Shown here one piece after another: positions 55,501-64,000 of a stretch of DNA of 64,000 bases (the first letter of the stretch is position 1; each line of letters begins with the position of its first letter). The notes beneath the pieces are model-generated. The model was not told the origin of the DNA. It saw only the letters and a program-made list of their open reading frames with translations, and made no database searches. Origin of the DNA: Oopsacas minuta (Eukaryota; Animalia; Porifera); contig JAKMXF010000266.1 in assembly GCA_024704765.1 (NCBI GenBank), positions 62,001 through 126,000 of the forward strand. The letters are read 5' to 3'. The translations under genes and the position numbers were made by a program.

Positions 55501-58500
55501 AGTCTATATTTTCTATTGTAACTGTCTGGACTAAAGATCGGGTTAACTACTATCAATGCAACCTAGACGATTACAATTATTTCTTTTAGTTATAAGTCTA
55601 CTTGATAATTATGTTATAGTAGATGAGTTCTATCAATTCCAAGCGAGTTAATTTGGTCAATTTATGATGCTTATCAATTTTGATGGGTTCCTTATATTGT
55701 TCATTAACATAATGTCCTCTAAGTTTTTGTGCTATTTTACAACTTCTCTTACTCTGCAATTACTGATTTAACCAAAGGCCTGTGGGAAGCCATCACTTTT
55801 GCTATACTCTCATTTTCGATAAGACCGCAATGCCGACTATAACACAATTGGCAATAATTATAATCAAATCAATTCTATACAAAGGAACATTGCTTCATGA
55901 AGAAATCTGACTCATTTTACAATAAGCTATCTACCATACAATAGCTTTACTCAGTAGTTTATTTGTTTCTAATTATGTTAAACTGATTTTAGAGGGATAT
56001 ACAGCTGTCTTAAGGATTTATGTACGGCCATGAATGATCAACAACAACAACAATTTGTGAATATCATATTGCATATAACTTGATTTCTCTAGGTTTCAGA
56101 GCTAGTATCTTCCTTACAAGAAGAAGCTATTATATCTGGGATAATACCTTCCCCACACAATGCATTGGATAACCCAAATCCAAAGGCTAATTTATCTAAA
56201 TCTACTCCTAAGCGAGTACGTAAAGGCTGCATAGCTCAATCTGTATTTAGTGTACAGGACGAATTCCTTAACTCACCGGCTATGAAACTACGTAGGGGCA
56301 TTATAGTTGTAATGGCAACTAAAAGGCTATTTTATATTTATAAAGAGAAGCGGAATACAATAAAACTTTGTGTGAAAGCAGGTCCTAGTGAGTTAGGAGC
56401 TATAACTACATCCATGTCTATATCTTCTGGAGCTACAGCTGTTACTAATAAGAAATCAGATCCATTCTATGATTGGATGGTAAGGCTATATGACTAAAGT
56501 GAACTCTTGTATAACGTCCGTACACTCCTTTATAATGAGAGTTTATGTATTATTTGTCTTATATTTTCGCTATATAGACTAGTCCAGATCTTCACGAGTT
56601 GGTAGTTAGAAGTATGCTAGAAGCATACGCGTATATTCGCAGCAACCAGGAGAAAGAACATGCTACTAGATTAGGGCCAGACCGAGCCTTCGACATATCT
56701 ATTGCTCCTGCGTATCAGGCATCAAGAGGACCACACCCTGCTGAAAACTCCCTAAAATCTCTCCTAACAAATCTACAAACATTCTTTCCATTCCATCTCT
56801 CCGTACATTCACCAAATGAGAGATGGGATCATCAAGGGTGGGCTCCTGTGGGTACACGTGTATCTAATGGACCTAGTGCTCCTGATGCGAGCTTACTCTC
56901 CTTGTTAGGAGATGGACTTAATGCTCAAATCAGGAAAAATAAAAAATTTATACCTGTAGATGATATAGGCATGATGCTAGAAGCAGGTTAGTGGCTTAAT
57001 AGGAATTATGCTATGTGAATTCTCAGTATTAGTGAGTAGCTATTGATTTTTAGGATTATTGGGATTAATTTCAAGACTTAAGGAGTCTGAACTTGCAAAA
57101 GACAGACTTCACCAGAAACTGCTTAGATCCGAGGAACAAGGAAATGAACTCAAGATTGCTTGTCAACAAGCTCTTAGAATGGAGAATCAAGTAGACCAGC
57201 TTAGTCTACAACTCCAGACTCATGTCCCGAAGGAAAGTTACGAAAGTATGTCATCAGAACTGCAAGAGGTTTGTTGATGCGATAATATCATTAATCCGCC
57301 TACAGCTCATTCCACATCATTGTCTCGTATTAATAATATGAGTATAACTATCTACAAAATTATGTATCACAAATTGCATAATAGAATTGAAAAGAATACA
57401 TCAAACAATACACAAATACTTGGTGATCTGTTCATAGGCTAGGCTAGTCATGCTTTCTCAAAAAATATTTTTCCAGGCAATTGATCGTGAGCATCAAACT
57501 CAAACAGTGCTGACAACTCAATCAGAGAAGATTGAACAGTTGAAAGGCAGGCTACAGAAAAACACTTTGGAGTTACAACGGAGAGAGAATACCCTACAAG
57601 AATCCCTACAAGAATTGACCAATGTTAAACAGGATTCAGCTCGTGCGAATCAACAATCCCGTCTCTCAGATCGACAACTAACTCAGCTTCAGGACACTTG
57701 TCAGCATACTCAACTACAATTGAGAGATGCTCAGCTCGCTCTACGGACGACTGCACGAGAGAGAGAAATTCTTGTGAAATATCTACGTAGAGCAAATCAT
57801 ATTTTTATAGAAGCGAAATCAAAGCTACATCTATCTGCCCACACAAATGCACCATTAGAGCTTGAACGTATGATGTCACCTAGTACTGAACTACTCAACA
57901 GTATGGAAGAGCATAACAACTTTCCACAATTAGATTCGTGTATGGTAACGGTGAGTGTTAGCATGTAGACTTTAGGAATTAATTAATTAATTAATAGAAC
58001 GCAAATAGCATACGTAACATCAGAGATATCTTCCATTGTATAAGACATTACCACAAAATATTGGCTTGAACACTGTATAATAATCCTTGTAGGTTAAGAC
58101 TTTTCTGGAGTTCTACCAATATTCACTAGGCCGTATCAGCTTCCTACACTCACAACTAATTCAGACTCAATCACATGCTACTGCTCTCAAACATGAAGTA
58201 GACGCTGCAACACGTAGACAGCTGACTGAAGCTGCTATTAGCATTGATAACCCAAGTAGACACTCAAGGCAATATTCTCCACTACCAGAAATCGCAATTA
58301 CTCGCACTTCCCCGATGAAATCAAGCCCAAAGTTAGACCATGGCGGTCATTCTAGGCTATATTTAGACACATTAAATAACGAGCTACGTCCAGACTCTCA
58401 GTTTACAGACACCCTATCTTTTGCACCTCTCCAAGGTACTCCTATTAACGTATCTTACAGGAGTGACACTCATCTGTCATCTGACACATATTTTCGCCCC

Positions 58501-58590
58501 ATCCCCCTTTCTCCAACTCCCTCTGAACAAGGTCAGCAATTAGGCCAGCGTATTGCTCAGAGCCTCGAGGGGTATAATCTATCCACCTGA
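52529..58590 (+). CDS. CCDC171: CCDC171-like long coiled-coil protein, multi-exon
   Basis: Coiled-coil exons plus YLHYLYQLLV, LSWKQLATMV, LIPSLRACSELAIQKKFL and MKLRRGIIVVMATKRL matching recalled CCDC171 segments. Confidence 0.75.
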
Positions 58591-59246
58591 ACACTTTCTT
58601 CCTCAACAAATTTTAATCCATTTTGCTTTGTATTTGCTCACTAATACTCTTGTATTCTCACTGTTTCAAACCTCTTACCTTTTAGGTTCGTTATACTATG
58701 CTCTTTCTATATATATATATGTATTTAGTTCTATCTAAACATGGAAAAGTCAAAACAAATTTGCACGAATTACTTTATCTCATAAACTAATAATCATGCT
58801 ATGATTTTCCTATCCCATAATGATAAAGTGTTCACTCCATCCCCACTGATGTTAATAATGATGTACACAGTATTATGGTGACATAGATTGATACTTAAGG
58901 AGAACAAGGTAGGATTGCAATGTCATCAACTACTAGAAATATGATTCTAACCAATTATATATGAATTAATGTAATTCTAACAAATAGACATCATTTGCAT
59001 TTCCCCCAAAATTGGATTACATTCTGTTAATACGTATCTACCTATGACAAGTGGTTTCCTAATCATATGAAATTAGAAATACACAAATACTTGGTTGTTA
59101 TCTTCTACGTGTCCATTTCAAATGTGGTTGTGATAATGTCTAGCTCTTTCTTCCTCGAGTTTCAGTACTTTGATGTTAGATTACTTTATATTCCCAAACA
59201 TAGAGTTTACATTAATTGTTAAAACCCAATTAGCCAATTAATTTTG

Positions 59247-62200
59247 ATGTCAAAAAGTCGCAACTTAAGATCCTACTTCACAGAATGGGACAGGGGTCTT
59301 GTTAAGACCCGAGGTGAAATTCTATCAAATTTTATACATGAATCTAAAGGCATGACAGCTCCAGAGTTAGAACAAAAGTTTAAATTAGGAGCTAGTCTCT
59401 TTCTAGCAAGAATTACATCTTGGCTGAGGCTGTCTTATCTATCAGATAGATCTCACTTATCACTTCAACTCAAATCAATTGCTATATTTGTAAGCACTGC
59501 TAATGGCACTAGGTTAGTATATCATTTTATCCTTATTTTGCATTGATTCCTCTATGTTTACAAGATGTATAATTATGTTAGTGATAAATGTATTGAAAGG
59601 TCACTTTCTTACACAATTCTATTTCGCATAATCGTTCTATTTGTAATCCAATGATCTTCTCCTTAACGAATCCCATCCATTTTCTTGTTAACAATTCTTC
59701 CAATTTGTGTTTGCTTAGTACATCAGTATTCTATAAATTATTACAGAGTTTTGATGGCTAATTTTACGTAGATTATTTCTGTTTTATTCTAGTTAAGATA
59801 ACTATTAACAAATTGCTTGTATTTTGACGGAATTCTTCTATCTCTTAACTAATTTATAATTTTAATATCCTTTCTTAATGTCTACTTAACTTTGTTAGAG
59901 TGATCCGCAATTTTACAATATTTATTTCTTTAATTCTACCTCTAAATTAGCTTGGCCTTATGGCAAGTTCTGCTGAGTCAGATATTACTAAAATTGATCT
60001 AAATCAGGATAACCAAATTCCTGTCTTCCAAAGGTCCACTTCTAACAATCCGATGTCATTCTATGAAGCATTAGTTGACAGATATTTAAACGCACATGAG
60101 TATCAAGTACCATCTTTTGTGCATTTTCAAATTCCACCCATTGATTACGAGAGTGACGGTTGCAAACTTGGAAAACTTAGAACTTTGGTACTTGACAAGA
60201 AGAATATCTACAAAGCTGGTATTCCAGATGGAGGCTTATCCAAACTCTGTCCGAACATAACTCTGATACATCTATCAAGGAATCCCTTAAAGAGTTGGTC
60301 TGTGATTGAATCGATTTTACGGGAATTTCCTCTTCTAGAAGAGTGTAATCTACATAGGACATGCTTCACTATTAGCCCAGAAGACCTCTCAGCTATCTCA
60401 CCTACTATAATATGTCCAAAATTACATACTTTAAACCTAGCTCATACCAATATAGGCTGGTCGGAGATCCAACACATTGCTCTACAATGCCCAAACTTAA
60501 GAGATCTAGAATTGGTTGGTAACAGCCTCGAGAGCATTTCTACAAAAGCTCTTGACTGCTTACCTAATATAGAGTGTTTAAATCTATCTCTTAACAAAAT
60601 ACACTCTTGGGAAGAGGTCACTAAATTGGGTAAATTACCAAAACTAGAAATCTTACATCTGTCTAACAATCCGATCAGTTTCCAAAACTACTGTACACAT
60701 CCATCTATTGCTTGTAATACAACCTCAGTTGAGACGATACCCACAGAAATTGAATTTCAACAACAAGACAGTACAAATAATGAAACTGTAGAACCCCCAC
60801 AAATACCTCTATTCCCTTCTCTTTTAACTTTATCACTAGCTGAGGTAAATCTATGTAAATGGCAAGAATTGGATATTCTAGCTGCACTACCTGTTTTGAA
60901 GAATATTAGATTAAAAGACCTTCCTCTTGCCAGTGATATCTCCCAGGAAGATAGACGTAAAATTTTCCTATCTTGGTTCCCAAATATTGTTAAACTAAAC
61001 GGGAGCACTTCCGATGTGAATGAACGAATAAAATCTGAACGATTCACTCTTCGATATTTCTACTCTCTAGAGTACAAACCATTATTTCTACCACGTCTTA
61101 TTAAAAAGTATGGTGACTTAAAGCCCCTTATAGATATAGACTTATCATTTGGATATAAGGAGATTATTGAGGTGGAGTTTATGTATAAATCAAAGTTATG
61201 GCGTCGCGAAAAGATCACTGTAAAACAGACAGTTAAAGATTTAATATTTTGGCTGAAGAAAGAACTCAATGTTCCTAAGAACTCATTCACTGTATATCAT
61301 CTCCCCGAGTCAGCTGATAGAAATAGCTTCACTGACATGGTGGAGCTCTACATGTCGTCACTACCTTTGAGTAGATTTGACATACACGAAGGAGATCAGA
61401 TAATAATTACATAAGCATGTTATGATGCTAACTATTAACTCTATCTTAAGTTTAGGCTTGACTTATGAGTTTTGTTATGTTAATTATTATTTTCAATTTT
61501 ATTTTTGTTGATTTTCTATACATTTTTGATAGATTTGTTAGCTGTAAGGATGGCACAGTACTATTTTTCAATGGGACTAGTAGATGATAATTTCACTACT
61601 GCGTTTATTAATCTTAATAGACTTGAAGTTGACAGCTTTTCAGAATTCTTAGAGTTAATCTTAGTTTTCCTTTCAAGCCCGAAAGAAGCTCAACAATTTA
61701 TTTCCAAACTAGAGAAATACGCGGGCAGTCTTAACATTCCGTTTTCAGCTATACAGTTGATAGCCAAAGCGGTACTGTTATTTTTCCGTGGCTGTCTGCA
61801 GAAATCTCTCTCAATCACACAAATAGCTGAAGATCTCTCCAACTTAGGTCTGAATGAAGATAAAACACGTCGCTTAACACAAAACTGGAGTCATTCTTTC
61901 GGAATTATTTCTAATGTCAACCAACAGCGAGTATTGACAATCCACCAATTGACTGACTTAGAATGGAGATTTGGTGTAACAACAGGGAATTCACTTGCTA
62001 GCAGAGTTGGAAAGATCTTCCTACAAATGAAATTTAAAATATTCACAGGCGAGATTATTAGCATTGAAATGAGTATAGAGCAGTTCTACTCATTTCTCCA
62101 CGAAATGGAGAAAGCGAGAGCTAGTATTGAATATCTAATCTAGCATATACGTATTATCTATGTATTTGATTGATATAATGTATAAAGTGTTGTTAAATTC

Positions 62201-63962
62201 TAATAAGATTATTTATCCAGTAATATTGTTATATAGAAAAATACATAAATAAATATATTAGTGATAGTTTAAATAATGCAAATTTCTGACGAATTCGCAG
62301 CTGAATCCGGTCTGGGCTATACCTGGGAAGCAGAGTATGAGAAGAGTTGGGAAGCTCTTAAGGAAGATGAGATCGGAGATCTACAGTCGAGTATTGATAA
62401 AATAGTAGCTGACAAGGCATTAGCAAAGAGAAAATTGTTATTACGTCAGCGTCTCCCAAAGAATATTCGTCTGGGTATGACCAGATGTTTGTGCTTAGTA
62501 ATCGACCAATCTAGATGGATGATAGAACGTGACATGAGACCTACACGTCTTGGATGTTGTTGTAAACTAATCCCAGAATTCATTAAACAGTTTTTCTCAC
62601 AAAACCCTGTTTCTCAACTCTCCATTATAGTTAGTAAAGACGGTCGTGCTAGCCTAGCTTCTCCAATGCTAGCTCAGGTCCAAAAACATATTAAATCTGT
62701 TACCGCGTTAAAACCAATAGAATGTTCAGGTGATATTTCCCTACAGAACTCATTAGAAATGTCTATGAGACTTCTTAAACATGTTCCCTCGCATATGAAC
62801 AAGGAAATCCTTGTCATAACAGGCTCTCTCAACACATGCGACCCTGATAACATCAATAATTCAGTACAAAAAGCCATTGATGAAGGTATAAGATGTTCAA
62901 TTATATCTCTAGCAGCTGAAGTATTCATTTTCAAACACGTAGCAAAAAGTACACAAGGTTCTTATGACGTGTGTATTGATGAAAACCATTTCAGAGATCT
63001 TTTACTTTATCATACAAATCCACCTCCTTCAAAACCTGGCCATGAAGCTTCGCTTATTAAAATGGGTTTCCCAATTTACACTGTAGAGTCACAACCTGCA
63101 TTATGCTTGTGTCATATTAGTCAAAATTTATCAGATATAGAATTGCTATCCAAACCTACGTATTCATGTCCACAATGTGCTAGTAAATACTGTGAAGTAC
63201 CGATAGAATGTAAAGGATGTGGACTTCCGCTCGTATCAGCCTCGCATCTAGCTCGTTCATACCAACATTTATTCCCCGTGCCTCCATTCGAGGAGAGAGA
63301 ATTCGACACAAATTGGATTCAAGCTGTGAATTGCGCAGCTTGTGGAGTCCCGTTTAGTAATAAACAAAAATTGTTTACTTGTACTCAATGCAGTAATAGC
63401 TATTGTATAGATTGTGATATCTATATACACGAGACATTGCATTCATGTCCTGATTGTGTCAATTTACATTAATTCTAATTCTATTATTTATGTTTATCTT
63501 GAATATTTCATATGTTATCATTCTTAATTTAGGTTTTTAATCGAGTTTATGGAGGCAGGAGGGCCTCTTACTGTTATGGAGATTGTAAAGTCCCGAGAAG
63601 GAAAGGAATCGGATAAAACAGAAGCCTTACGTCTGCTGTTACAAATAATTAACTCTGGTAGACAGTATAAGGAGTTTCTATGTGAAAATGGTGCTATAAG
63701 AGGTATAGCTGAATGTCTGGGAAATAGCGCTAATATTCAAACACAAGAAGCTTGCAAACAGGTCAATAATCCTTTATGATTTATTTGGTAAATTGTATTT
63801 ATTGTGTTTAATAGGTTCTGTATAAACTAGCCATAGGCAACCCGCGTCACAGCTTGAAGGTGTACACAGCCTTGGTAGCACTGCTACAAGCTAGGAGTCC
63901 TTCTGCACAAAAGCTAGCTGCTTCTACTCTAAGGAAAATACACCCAACTTTAGATCCTATAG
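59247..63962 (+). CDS. ARMH1: Armadillo-like helical domain protein ARMH1 (C1orf228), 3'-partial; exons 59247-59512, 63533-63761, 63815-63962; first intron hosts 3 genes
   Basis: Exon 1 EWDRG...GMTAPELEQKFKLGASLFLARITSWLRL...TANGTR joins in phase 2 to FLIEFMEAGG...NSGRQYKEFLCENGAIRGIAE and then GNPRHSLKVYTALVALL. Confidence 0.9.
59960..61414 (+). CDS. TBCEL: Tubulin-folding cofactor E-like (LRR + C-terminal Ubl, no CAP-Gly), intronless, nested
   Basis: SFYEALVDRY, LRR repeats, IVKLNGS..ERIKSERFTLRY, C-terminal IHEGDQIII. Confidence 0.88.
   Translation: MASSAESDITKIDLNQDNQIPVFQRSTSNNPMSFYEALVDRYLNAHEYQVPSFVHFQIPPIDYESDGCKLGKLRTLVLDKKNIYKAGIPDGGLSKLCPNITLIHLSRNPLKSWSVIESILREFPLLEECNLHRTCFTISPEDLSAISPTIICPKLHTLNLAHTNIGWSEIQHIALQCPNLRDLELVGNSLESISTKALDCLPNIECLNLSLNKIHSWEEVTKLGKLPKLEILHLSNNPISFQNYCTHPSIACNTTSVETIPTEIEFQQQDSTNNETVEPPQIPLFPSLLTLSLAEVNLCKWQELDILAALPVLKNIRLKDLPLASDISQEDRRKIFLSWFPNIVKLNGSTSDVNERIKSERFTLRYFYSLEYKPLFLPRLIKKYGDLKPLIDIDLSFGYKEIIEVEFMYKSKLWRREKITVKQTVKDLIFWLKKELNVPKNSFTVYHLPESADRNSFTDMVELYMSSLPLSRFDIHEGDQIIIT
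61550..62143 (+). CDS. COMMD7: COMM domain protein 7, intronless, nested
   Basis: PKEAQQF, LEWRFGVTTG...VGKIFLQMK, QFYSFLHEMEKAR. ATG 61550. Confidence 0.9.
   Translation: MAQYYFSMGLVDDNFTTAFINLNRLEVDSFSEFLELILVFLSSPKEAQQFISKLEKYAGSLNIPFSAIQLIAKAVLLFFRGCLQKSLSITQIAEDLSNLGLNEDKTRRLTQNWSHSFGIISNVNQQRVLTIHQLTDLEWRFGVTTGNSLASRVGKIFLQMKFKIFTGEIISIEMSIEQFYSFLHEMEKARASIEYLI
62276..63472 (+). CDS. GTF2H2: TFIIH subunit p44/Ssl1, intronless, nested
   Basis: GYTWEAEYEKSWEALKED, vWA domain (QNPVSQL, SLQNSLE, GSLNTCDP), CPQCASKYCEVPIECKGCGLPLVSASHLARSYQHLFP, C-terminal CIDCDIYIHETLHSCPDC. Confidence 0.97.
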   Translation: MQISDEFAAESGLGYTWEAEYEKSWEALKEDEIGDLQSSIDKIVADKALAKRKLLLRQRLPKNIRLGMTRCLCLVIDQSRWMIERDMRPTRLGCCCKLIPEFIKQFFSQNPVSQLSIIVSKDGRASLASPMLAQVQKHIKSVTALKPIECSGDISLQNSLEMSMRLLKHVPSHMNKEILVITGSLNTCDPDNINNSVQKAIDEGIRCSIISLAAEVFIFKHVAKSTQGSYDVCIDENHFRDLLLYHTNPPPSKPGHEASLIKMGFPIYTVESQPALCLCHISQNLSDIELLSKPTYSCPQCASKYCEVPIECKGCGLPLVSASHLARSYQHLFPVPPFEEREFDTNWIQAVNCAACGVPFSNKQKLFTCTQCSNSYCIDCDIYIHETLHSCPDCVNLH

Positions 63963-64000
63963 GTAAGTAAATACTACTTACTAATATGCGAACTACACTT

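What the first reader, a model, noticed from the sequence alone, without database searches (positions are those of the whole stretch)
59513..63532. One intron carries a same-strand train of three complete genes (ARMH1 intron 1 contains TBCEL, COMMD7, GTF2H2)
Seen: ARMH1 exon 1 ends ACT AG|GTTAGT at 59512 and resumes at TTTAG|G TTT TTA ATC GAG (63533), restoring R-F-L-I-E-F in phase 2. The 4,020-nt intron is almost filled by three intact, intronless, head-to-tail genes on the host's strand, separated by 135 and 132 nt. Established: nested genes are usually single and mostly antisense, and GTF2H2 and COMMD7 are multi-exon housekeeping genes in other animals. Inference: making full ARMH1 mRNA requires reading through three same-sense 3'-end signals. 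Either the intron is itself a polycistronic precursor cut into three mRNAs, or 3'-end processing is switched off in cells that express ARMH1. This is my best candidate for an undescribed system in the window.
Basis: partly seen in the sequence, partly recalled or inferred. Interest (0 to 1): 0.9.

Follow-up and report, generated by a model that had tools for sequence, protein, structure and literature searches.

The report
Three-gene train inside a sponge intron
In what is very probably a glass sponge, three complete housekeeping genes sit head to tail inside the first intron of ARMH1 on the same strand. RNA data show the host is spliced across them while the guests get a spliced leader, so this looks like a nested version of the known trans-spliced operon rather than a new system.

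Summary
ARMH1 (Pfam DUF5578) is split by a 4,020-nt GT..AG intron (59513-63532). The intron holds three intact intronless + strand genes: a TBCE-like protein without CAP-Gly, COMMD7 and GTF2H2. An RNA run of the same sample contains the 59512/63533 junction at a depth close to that of the exons.

That run also shows the same foreign 5' tail (AAAAAACTTAC, then a shared AG) at the TBCEL acceptor, at the GTF2H2 acceptor, and at the ARMH1 exon-2 acceptor itself. This is spliced-leader trans-splicing. RNA contigs bridge both guest spacers.

The whole nest is conserved in five other assemblies and in a closer relative's DNA run, with splice sites, intact ORFs and spacers of 60-300 nt.

Best reading: a trans-spliced, operon-like train nested in a host intron. 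Transcripts that run on into exon 2 give a leader-capped ARMH1 lacking 94 residues, starting at a lineage-specific Met.

This is a variant of known things. Spliced-leader operons are well known, and nested genes plus a spliced leader are published for glass sponges and ctenophores. Operons, however, had not been reported in hexactinellids as of a 2021 review statement. First readers of this scan noted similar nests and acceptor signatures in other windows of this genome; those notes are unchecked.

The parts
59234..59512 (+). ARMH1 exon 1. ATG at 59247. Possible leader acceptor TTAG at 59230-59233. The exon ends in phase 2 before GTTAGT.
   Evidence: DUF5578 profile 12-92, E 3e-25. RNA depth rises to about 1,450 here. 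The exon and its 5' splice site GTRAGY are conserved in six loci. The 5' boundary is inferred only.
59513..63532 (+). ARMH1 intron 1, 4,020 nt, GT..AG, holding the three guest genes.
   Evidence: RNA joint 59512/63533 in run X4, depth 975. Homologous introns of 3,899-4,876 nt occur in L001-L005.
59513..59950 (+). 5' part of the intron: the outron of the guest train and the possible site of an internal promoter. It ends in the acceptor AATTAG.
   Evidence: No RNA contig at 59676-59872. Length is 398-1,163 nt in six loci, against 60-300 nt for the other spacers. AATTAG|C is kept in 5 of 6 loci. No block is conserved in all six.
59951..61414 (+). TBCE-like (TBCEL-type) guest gene. The leader-joined 5' end is at 59951 and the CDS is 59960-61414.
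   Evidence: Loose end AAAAAACTTAC before 59949, followed by AG. The ORF is intact at 474-499 aa in six loci.
61415..61549 (+). Spacer 1 (135 nt, 51% T), with acceptors GATAG and GTTAG just before the COMMD7 ATG.
   Evidence: RNA contig 61368-61558, depth 210, bridges it. A TTAG|C or TAG|C acceptor is found in all six loci. Composition.
61550..62143 (+). COMMD7 guest gene.
   Evidence: 197 aa in all six loci, 71-84% identical. A leader on this mRNA did not appear in the part of the output shown.
62144..62275 (+). Spacer 2 (132 nt). The leader acceptor AG is at 62260-62261.
   Evidence: RNA contig 62091-62289, depth 120, runs through the acceptor. Loose end AAAAAACTTAC before 62260.
62262..63472 (+). 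GTF2H2 (TFIIH p44) guest gene. The leader-joined 5' end is at 62262 and the CDS is 62276-63472.
   Evidence: 77-86% identical in five loci.
63473..63532 (+). Spacer 3 (60 nt, 57% T), ending in the TTTAG acceptor that is used both in cis and in trans.
   Evidence: One search shows the joint and a loose end at the same AG. The spacer is 60-110 nt in six loci.
63533..63761 (+). ARMH1 exon 2. Its first ATG, at 63549, is in frame and would start a leader-capped isoform lacking 94 residues.
   Evidence: DUF5578 profile 95-169. Leader tail at 63531. Met is present in all six loci but is L or I in other animals.
63762..63814 (+). ARMH1 intron 2 (53 nt).
   Evidence: RNA joint, depth 1,268.
63815..63962 (+). 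ARMH1 exon 3. The gene runs beyond the window end.
   Evidence: A loose end of 65 nt behind 63962, at a GT donor.

Best explanation
The three guests form a spliced-leader (SL) trans-spliced, operon-like train lying inside intron 1 of ARMH1 on the host's strand.

Polymerase II does not stop at the guests' 3' ends. Transcripts that still carry exon 1 can be cis-spliced from 59512 to 63533, which discards the whole train and gives full-length ARMH1 mRNA. Transcripts without a linked exon-1 donor are cut into TBCE-like, COMMD7 and GTF2H2 mRNAs by SL addition at the acceptors before each start codon, together with 3'-end formation. Such transcripts either started inside the first ~440 nt of the intron or have already been cut.

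What runs on past GTF2H2 receives an SL at the exon-2 acceptor. ARMH1 exon 2 onward therefore behaves as a fourth cistron, encoding an N-truncated ARMH1 that starts at the Met at 63549.

Shown: the nest, the cis junction, SL tails at three acceptors, RNA continuity across two spacers, and conservation in six or seven genomes.

Inferred: that the guests share one precursor, and where that precursor starts. My odds are about 55:45 for an internal promoter in the intron against the ARMH1 promoter alone.
For: -: in RNA run X4 the same 11-nt tail, AAAAAACTTAC, lies before 59949, 62260 and 63531. Each of these places starts with a genomic AG preceded by TT or AT. So one foreign leader ending in ...CTTACAG is joined at three true acceptors.
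- a GT..AG joint at 59512/63533 has depth 975, against exon depths of about 1,450-1,760.
- RNA contigs at 61368-61558 (depth 210) and 62091-62289 (depth 120) cross both guest spacers, the second running through the GTF2H2 acceptor. No joint from exon 1 to any guest acceptor is listed.
- An SL on exon 2, only 60 nt after the GTF2H2 stop, is what read-through from the train predicts. It is hard to explain with a separate promoter.
- the order, strand, splice sites and intact ORFs are kept in five other assemblies, at GTF2H2 77-86% and TBCE-like 57-65% identity. Spacers are 103-300, 103-155 and 60-110 nt, in the range of known SL operons.
- acceptors of the (A)TTAG|C type lie before the guest ATGs in the relatives.
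- the Met that would start the short isoform is kept in all six loci and is L or I in other animals.
- Literature: glass sponges have an SL and about 12% nested genes (PMC10282587). In SL operons, trans-splicing resolves polycistronic RNA (PMC7986045).
Against: - No single read or long cDNA spanning two cistrons was seen. A contig across two genes does not prove one molecule, as itself warns.
- The SL on COMMD7 did not appear in the shown part of the output; 43 loose ends were not listed.
- Only 11-13 nt of the leader were recovered, and no SL RNA gene was found in the window or the loci.
- No poly(A) sites were mapped.
- No motif is conserved in all six outrons, so an internal promoter is unproven.
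- If there is only one promoter, the C. elegans rule predicts exon 1-TBCEL chimeras, which were not seen. That rule, from my memory of Conrad et al. 1991/1993, is that an upstream 5' splice site turns a trans-acceptor into a cis-acceptor.
- Depths are contig k-mer means from one whole-sample library.
- The taxon (glass sponge) rests on genome features and earlier notes, not on a test made here.
Confidence: 0.6

Rival explanations
1. Three independent monocistronic guest genes. Each has its own promoter in the preceding spacer and its own terminator, and the spliced leader only trims their 5' ends. The host is made from rare read-through transcripts.
For: SL trans-splicing also occurs on monocistronic genes in all SL-using animals. 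For example, about half of chaetognath genes are trans-spliced but only 18% are operonic (PMC12460157). No polycistronic molecule was directly seen. Operons had not been reported in hexactinellids (PMC7986045).
Against: The spacers of 103-163 nt (one of 300) and 60-110 nt are poorly conserved and leave little room for a 3' UTR plus a promoter plus an outron. RNA contigs run across both spacers and through the GTF2H2 acceptor. The host junction depth (975) is as high as guest expression, so read-through is not rare. An SL on exon 2 would need a promoter within 60 nt.
Confidence: 0.2
2. One promoter with a strict either/or switch. Every transcript starts upstream of ARMH1 exon 1. It is then either cis-spliced, giving full-length ARMH1 and destroying the guests, or trans-spliced and cleaved, giving three guest mRNAs plus short ARMH1 and wasting exon 1. 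This is a sub-case of the best explanation, counted inside it.
For: No motif is conserved in all six outrons. Host and guests have similar steady-state depth. Exon 1 depth (about 1,450) exceeds junction depth (975).
Against: The exon-1 donor should capture the first acceptor (TBCEL), yet no such joint is listed. The 5' part of the intron is 3-10 times longer than the other spacers in all six loci, as expected if it holds a promoter. TGCTTWGTACATC is kept in 5 of 6 loci about 230 nt before the acceptor, though it is not enriched in the window.
Confidence: 0.27
3. ARMH1 really starts at exon 2, with leader-exon 2 as the main mRNA. On this view 'exon 1' is a separate small gene or a relic, and the 59512/63533 junction is splicing noise.
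For: A leader is joined at the exon-2 acceptor, and an in-frame Met follows 16 nt later in all six loci. Gene callers in relatives start the product at that Met (P0134 and P0135).
Against: The junction depth of 975 is of the order of the exon depth. Exon 1 matches DUF5578 positions 12-92 (E 3e-25), and the spliced product is colinear with orthologues whose exon-2 part starts at residue 90-96. The exon-1 ORF, its phase and its donor are conserved in six loci.
Confidence: 0.05
4. Assembly join error or collapsed haplotypes create a false nest.
For: None found.
Against: One long-read contig covers 58100-64000 with no differences. DNA depth is even. The same order is found in five independent assemblies and in a relative's DNA run.
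Confidence: 0.01

Closest known systems
Spliced-leader-resolved operons of nematodes, tunicates and chaetognaths (PMC7986045, PMC12460157, PMC2481426)
   Same: Same-strand genes 60-300 nt apart. A spliced leader is joined at an acceptor a few bases before the start codon of downstream genes. Transcription continues past upstream 3' ends. The genes are of housekeeping type.
   Different: The whole train lies inside an intron of a fourth gene on the same strand, and the last 'cistron' is the host's own exon 2 onward. No operon-specific leader (SL2 type) could be tested. The polycistronic precursor is inferred, not seen. Operons were stated not to have been reported in hexactinellid sponges (PMC7986045, 2021), and I found no later report in the held library.
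Nested intronic genes of glass sponges and ctenophores (A. vastus, PMC10282587; Hormiphora, PMC8527503)
   Same: Compact genomes with many single-exon genes and about 12% of genes nested in introns. Many are parallel to the host and several can sit in one host. A trans-spliced leader is present. Microsynteny is conserved among glass sponges.
   Different: [quoted passage not shown] They do not show how host and guests are processed. Here the RNA shows the host junction, leader addition to guests, and dual use of the host acceptor.
Cholinergic gene locus (VAChT/unc-17 inside the first intron of ChAT/cha-1, same strand; from my own knowledge, Alfonso et al. 1994)
   Same: A complete same-strand gene sits in the host's first intron. 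Host mRNA is made by splicing across it, and the arrangement is evolutionarily conserved.
   Different: There the guest shares the host's 5' exon by alternative cis-splicing. Here no exon 1-guest joint was seen and the guests carry a spliced leader instead. Here there are also three unrelated guests rather than one functionally linked gene.
Internal trans-splicing and 'unusual operon arrangements' in C. elegans (from memory: Morton and Blumenthal 2011; the paper is not held)
   Same: One acceptor can receive either an upstream exon or a spliced leader, which gives N-terminally different products.
   Different: I could not read the paper, so the comparison is a lead only. The organism and the leader are unrelated.

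Membership tests
SL trans-splicing operon | Two or more same-strand genes with short spacers (tens to a few hundred nt). | tested here: met
   Spacers are 135, 132 and 60 nt in the window, and 103-300, 103-155 and 60-110 nt in five relatives.
SL trans-splicing operon | Downstream mRNAs begin with a spliced leader joined at a 3' splice acceptor. | tested here: met
   The same tail, AAAAAACTTAC(AG), is at the acceptors of GTF2H2 (62262), ARMH1 exon 2 (63533) and the first guest (59951). COMMD7 was not visible in the listed rows.
SL trans-splicing operon | One promoter and a polycistronic precursor. | tested here: inconclusive
   RNA contigs bridge both guest spacers (61368-61558 and 62091-62289), but contigs do not prove single molecules. 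No start-site data exist.
SL trans-splicing operon | An SL RNA gene with the leader followed by a GT donor and an Sm site. | not testable with these tools
   None in the window or the five loci, and no Rfam match.
Nested intronic gene (parallel type) | The guest transcript lies wholly within one intron of a host whose flanking exons are joined in mRNA. | tested here: met
   The 59512/63533 joint in RNA. The guest ORFs and leader sites all lie within 59513-63532.
Cholinergic-locus type (shared 5' exon) | Guest mRNA carries the host's first exon. | tested here: not met
   No joint from 59512 to 59951, to about 61541 or to 62262 is listed, and the guests carry the leader instead. Rare chimeras below the listing threshold are not excluded.
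ARMH1 (Pfam DUF5578) | A colinear match to the DUF5578 domain over the N-terminal ~170 residues. | tested here: met
   Profile 12-92 plus 95-169. Gap-free alignment with 11 orthologues across the junction. The Atlas cluster 'Armadillo like helical domain containing 1' carries DUF5578.
Hexactinellid (glass sponge) genome | Compact, AT-rich, with many single-exon genes, many nested genes and an SL. | tested here: inconclusive
   These features fit (PMC10282587), and earlier follow-up notes say glass sponge. No marker gene or named hexactinellid homologue was obtained here: the nearest named GTF2H2 hits are only 48% identical.

The most novel reading that the evidence does not exclude
In glass sponges the exon-1 donor of a host gene and the spliced-leader snRNP compete for one acceptor downstream of an intronic operon. 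A single precursor is then committed either to full-length ARMH1 or to three housekeeping mRNAs plus an N-truncated ARMH1, whose start Met arose in this lineage. On this reading it is a regulated either/or RNA-processing switch. It could apply to much of the roughly 12% of genes that are nested in these genomes, and it would make sponges another animal lineage with true operons.
Probability: 0.25. Interest if true: 0.7.

Novelty: new variant of a known kind. Interest (0 to 1): 0.5.

Why it matters
Published glass-sponge and ctenophore genome papers report thousands of same-strand nested genes and a spliced leader. They leave open how host and guest are processed from one strand. This locus gives a concrete, conserved and RNA-supported example.

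- The guests are leader-capped.
- The host is spliced across them.
- The host's own acceptor is used both ways.

If the shared precursor is confirmed, it would be transcript-level evidence for operons in sponges, where none had been reported as of 2021 (PMC7986045). It would also explain how compact early-branching animal genomes tolerate parallel nesting.

There is a practical consequence for annotation. Gene callers cut ARMH1 at the internal Met in relatives, and no call for the nested GTF2H2 of this genome turned up in the protein collection.

Tried and rejected
- **Taxon guesses from the leader tail.** Chaetognath leaders (PMC2481426; one listed form ends ...TTTGTTTAAA) and the ctenophore leader (ends AATTTGAG, PMC8527503) do not match ...AAAAAACTTACAG, so both were dropped.
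- **Literature search for the leader string.** It gave nothing relevant. The A. vastus leader is only in a supplementary figure that is not held. Douris 2010 and Morton and Blumenthal 2011 are not held.
- **SL RNA gene.** None in the window with up to 2 mismatches, none in the five loci, and no Rfam family in the window.
- **Internal promoter.** No k-mer is shared by all six outrons above the shuffled expectation. The 5-of-6 motif TGCTTWGTACATC is not enriched in the window. The bacterial-type promoter and terminator scan is at chance level and irrelevant here.
- **Window-wide acceptor test.** TTAG lies within 40 nt of the first ATG in 7 of 21 long ORFs, against 16% of random 40-mers. This is weak, because many of these ORFs are internal exons, so I did not use it as evidence.
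- **Poly(A) signals.** No consistent AATAAA in the spacers. The 3' ends remain unmapped.
- **Holes in RNA depth** (59676-59872, and 63478). I treat them with caution, because the tool states that a hole proves nothing.
- **Read laying limit.** Only one call was allowed, so 43 further loose ends, among them possibly the COMMD7 leader and poly(A) tails, could not be seen.

Full report
**What is in the sequence**

The region holds three uninterrupted + strand ORFs: 59960-61414 (484 aa), 61550-62143 (197 aa from the first ATG) and 62276-63472 (398 aa). They are separated by 135 and 132 nt.

- The third has Ssl1 + TFIIH C1-like domains (E 5e-70) and is GTF2H2/p44.
- The second has COMM_HN + COMM domains. 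Its best solved-structure match is human COMMD7 at E 1e-36, against 1e-3 for COMMD10.
- The first has only LRR hits in Pfam and no CAP-Gly. Its best PDB match is tubulin chaperone E, aligned after that protein's CAP-Gly part. The nearest Atlas clusters by features and by predicted structure are TBCE and TBCE-like proteins with a ubiquitin-like end. 'TBCEL' is therefore a fair name.

**The host split**

The peptide from 59247-59510 matches Pfam DUF5578 positions 12-92 (E 3e-25). The peptide from 63534-63761 matches positions 95-169 (E 2.5e-21). DUF5578 is the domain of ARMH1 clusters.

In ARMH1 orthologues from many animals the exon-2 part starts at residue 90-96. Exon 1 spliced to exon 2 aligns with eleven of them without a gap across the junction. 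The 4,020-nt intron (59513-63532) starts GTTAGT and ends TTTAG.

**RNA evidence (one call allowed)**

Four runs were laid on 58100-64000.
- X1 is a long-read DNA run with one contig covering the whole stretch without a difference. It is probably the source of the assembly.
- X3 is short-read DNA with even depth.
- X5 is DNA of a closer relative (organism B, 90-99% alike). Its contigs tile the nest and bridge exon 1/intron, intron/TBCEL, COMMD7/GTF2H2 and GTF2H2/exon 2.
- X4 comes from the same sample as X1 and X3 and behaves as RNA. Its depth follows the exons, and it has two GT..AG joints.

The first joint skips exactly 4,020 nt (59512/63533) at depth 975. Exon 1 has a depth of about 1,450 and exon 2 about 1,070-1,760. 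So the spliced host mRNA is a main product, not noise. The second joint is the 53-nt intron 2 (63762-63814).

**The spliced leader**

In X4 the same 11 letters, AAAAAACTTAC, lie in front of 59949, 62260 and 63531. At each place the next two genomic letters are AG, preceded by ..ATT or ..TTT. The simplest reading is a leader ending ...AAAAAACTTACAG that is joined at three real acceptors:
- 9 nt before the TBCEL ATG, with the exon starting at 59951;
- 14 nt before the GTF2H2 ATG, at 62262;
- at the ARMH1 exon-2 acceptor itself, at 63533.

Three independent hits of one foreign string at AG acceptors are not what an adapter gives. Real adapters appear as other strings in the same table.

Only 11-13 nt of the leader were recovered. 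The length is the same at all three sites, which would fit several leader variants that branch the assembly graph. The A. vastus paper also reports many leader variants (PMC10282587).

A leader on COMMD7 is not in the listed rows, and 43 loose ends were not shown. Acceptors do lie 8 and 17 nt before its ATG.

**RNA between the genes**

X4 contigs run from 61368 to 61558 (depth 210) and from 62091 to 62289 (depth 120). They go from inside the upstream coding region, across each spacer, and into the next coding region. The second passes through the GTF2H2 acceptor unspliced.

No X4 contig lies in 59676-59872, the 5' part of the intron. The tool warns that contigs across two genes do not prove one molecule and that holes prove nothing. 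I take this as consistent with a shared precursor, not as proof of one.

No joint from the exon-1 donor to any guest acceptor is listed.

**Conservation**

GTF2H2 has relatives at 84-86% identity and then nothing above 48%. The TBCE-like protein has six relatives at 59-65%.

I fetched five of their contigs, from ENA long-read assemblies. All five have the same order on one strand: DUF5578 exon 1, TBCE-like, COMMD7, GTF2H2, DUF5578 exon 2. The flanks are also the same, with a CCDC171-like gene upstream and SH2 and adaptin genes downstream.

Measured:
- Exon 1 ends AG|GTRAGY and exon 2 starts TTTAG|G (CCTAG|G in L003) in all six loci.
- The guest ORFs are intact: 474-499, 197 and 398-428 aa.
- The donor-to-TBCEL ATG distance is 398-1,163 nt.
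- The spacers are 107-300, 103-155 and 60-110 nt.

The spacers themselves hardly align. What is kept is the acceptor: AATTAG|C before TBCEL in 5 of 6 loci, and TTAG|C or TAG|C before COMMD7.

**The short ARMH1**

The first ATG of exon 2 lies 16 nt after the acceptor and is in frame. It is present in all six loci. In other animals this residue is L or I, as in ..EFLEVGG...

A leader-exon 2 mRNA would therefore encode ARMH1 without its first 94 residues. Gene callers in relatives already start the product there (P0134 and P0135). Whether that protein is made is not known.

**What organism**

The window is 32-39% GC. It has 53-nt introns and many long single-exon ORFs.

Published glass-sponge genomes have exactly this character. 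A. vastus is 80 Mb, 12,409 of its 19,578 transcripts are single-exon, 2,432 genes are nested, and it has a ~37-nt trans-spliced leader (PMC10282587). Earlier follow-up notes of this scan call the genome a glass sponge, and one names Oopsacas minuta. I did not test this independently, and no named hexactinellid homologue appeared in my searches. It therefore stays a well-fitting inference.

The O. minuta genome paper does not mention nested genes, trans-splicing or operons.

**How it most likely works**

The data fit a spliced-leader operon placed inside a host intron.
- Polymerase passes the guests' 3' ends, as it does in known SL operons.
- RNA that still carries the exon-1 donor can be cis-spliced to exon 2, which removes the train.
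- RNA without a linked donor is resolved by leader addition plus 3'-end formation.
- What continues beyond GTF2H2 is leader-capped at exon 2.

The leader on exon 2 is the most telling point. With only 60 nt after the GTF2H2 stop, it is best explained by read-through from the train, or by direct competition of the leader with the distant exon-1 donor.

Where the train's transcription starts is open.
- For an internal promoter: the 5' part of the intron is 3-10 times longer than the other spacers in all six loci, and exon 1-TBCEL chimeras are absent. In C. elegans an upstream donor converts a trans-acceptor into a cis-acceptor (my memory of Conrad et al.).
- Against it: no motif is conserved in all six outrons.

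I put about 0.6 on the polycistronic, leader-resolved reading as a whole. Within it I lean slightly towards an internal start. Independent monocistronic guests get about 0.2.

**Comparison with what is known**

SL operons are established in nematodes, tunicates and chaetognaths (PMC7986045, PMC12460157, PMC2481426). [quoted passage not shown] They are also described for a glass sponge (PMC10282587).

A 2021 review passage states that operons had not been reported in hexactinellids (PMC7986045). I found no later report in the held library.

The classical same-strand nest, VAChT inside ChAT intron 1, works by a shared 5' exon. That feature was tested here and not met.

So this is not a new kind of system. 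It is a new arrangement of known parts with first RNA-level support in a sponge. First readers of this scan have flagged many similar nests and acceptor-before-ATG patterns in other windows of this genome. Those notes are unchecked, and I did not use them as evidence.

**Verdict**

This is a new variant of a known kind, of moderate interest.

Noticed in passing
L002:4956-5068 and L002:7073-7187: Two inverted copies of a ~115-nt GC-richer repeat, 73% alike. One is in the 5' part of the ARMH1 intron and one in the TBCEL-COMMD7 spacer of this relative. This explains its 300-nt spacer, and the element looks like a small mobile insertion tolerated inside the train.
   Followed up: partly
window 58642-59261: A low-depth RNA contig (33x) runs from the 3' end of the highly expressed upstream CCDC171-like gene (depth 2,400-6,400) across the 656-nt spacer into ARMH1 exon 1. 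This suggests read-through from the upstream gene. A TTAG acceptor at 59230-59233 lies 13 nt before the ARMH1 ATG.
   Followed up: partly
window 59944-59951, 59227-59234; L001-L005 before the TBCEL and COMMD7 ATGs: Leader acceptors share the context (A)ATTAG|C, which differs from the cis acceptors seen here (TTTAG|G, AATAG|G). This may be a distinct trans-acceptor consensus.
   Followed up: partly
window 62276-63472: The protein collection returned no 100% match for this window's GTF2H2, although it did for the neighbouring TBCE-like gene (P0121). In relatives, ARMH1 is called in pieces starting at the internal Met. Nested genes and their hosts seem to be under-annotated in these assemblies.
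   Followed up: no
L003:9317-10603: In the most distant relative the GTF2H2 ORF is 428 aa from its first ATG, and no AG lies within 60 nt upstream of it. The true start and acceptor are probably further in.
   Followed up: no
window 62181-62189 and the matching places in L001 and L002: ATGTATAAAG, about 40-55 nt after the COMMD7 stop, is the only well-kept block in that spacer among three loci. It is a candidate 3'-end signal.
   Followed up: no
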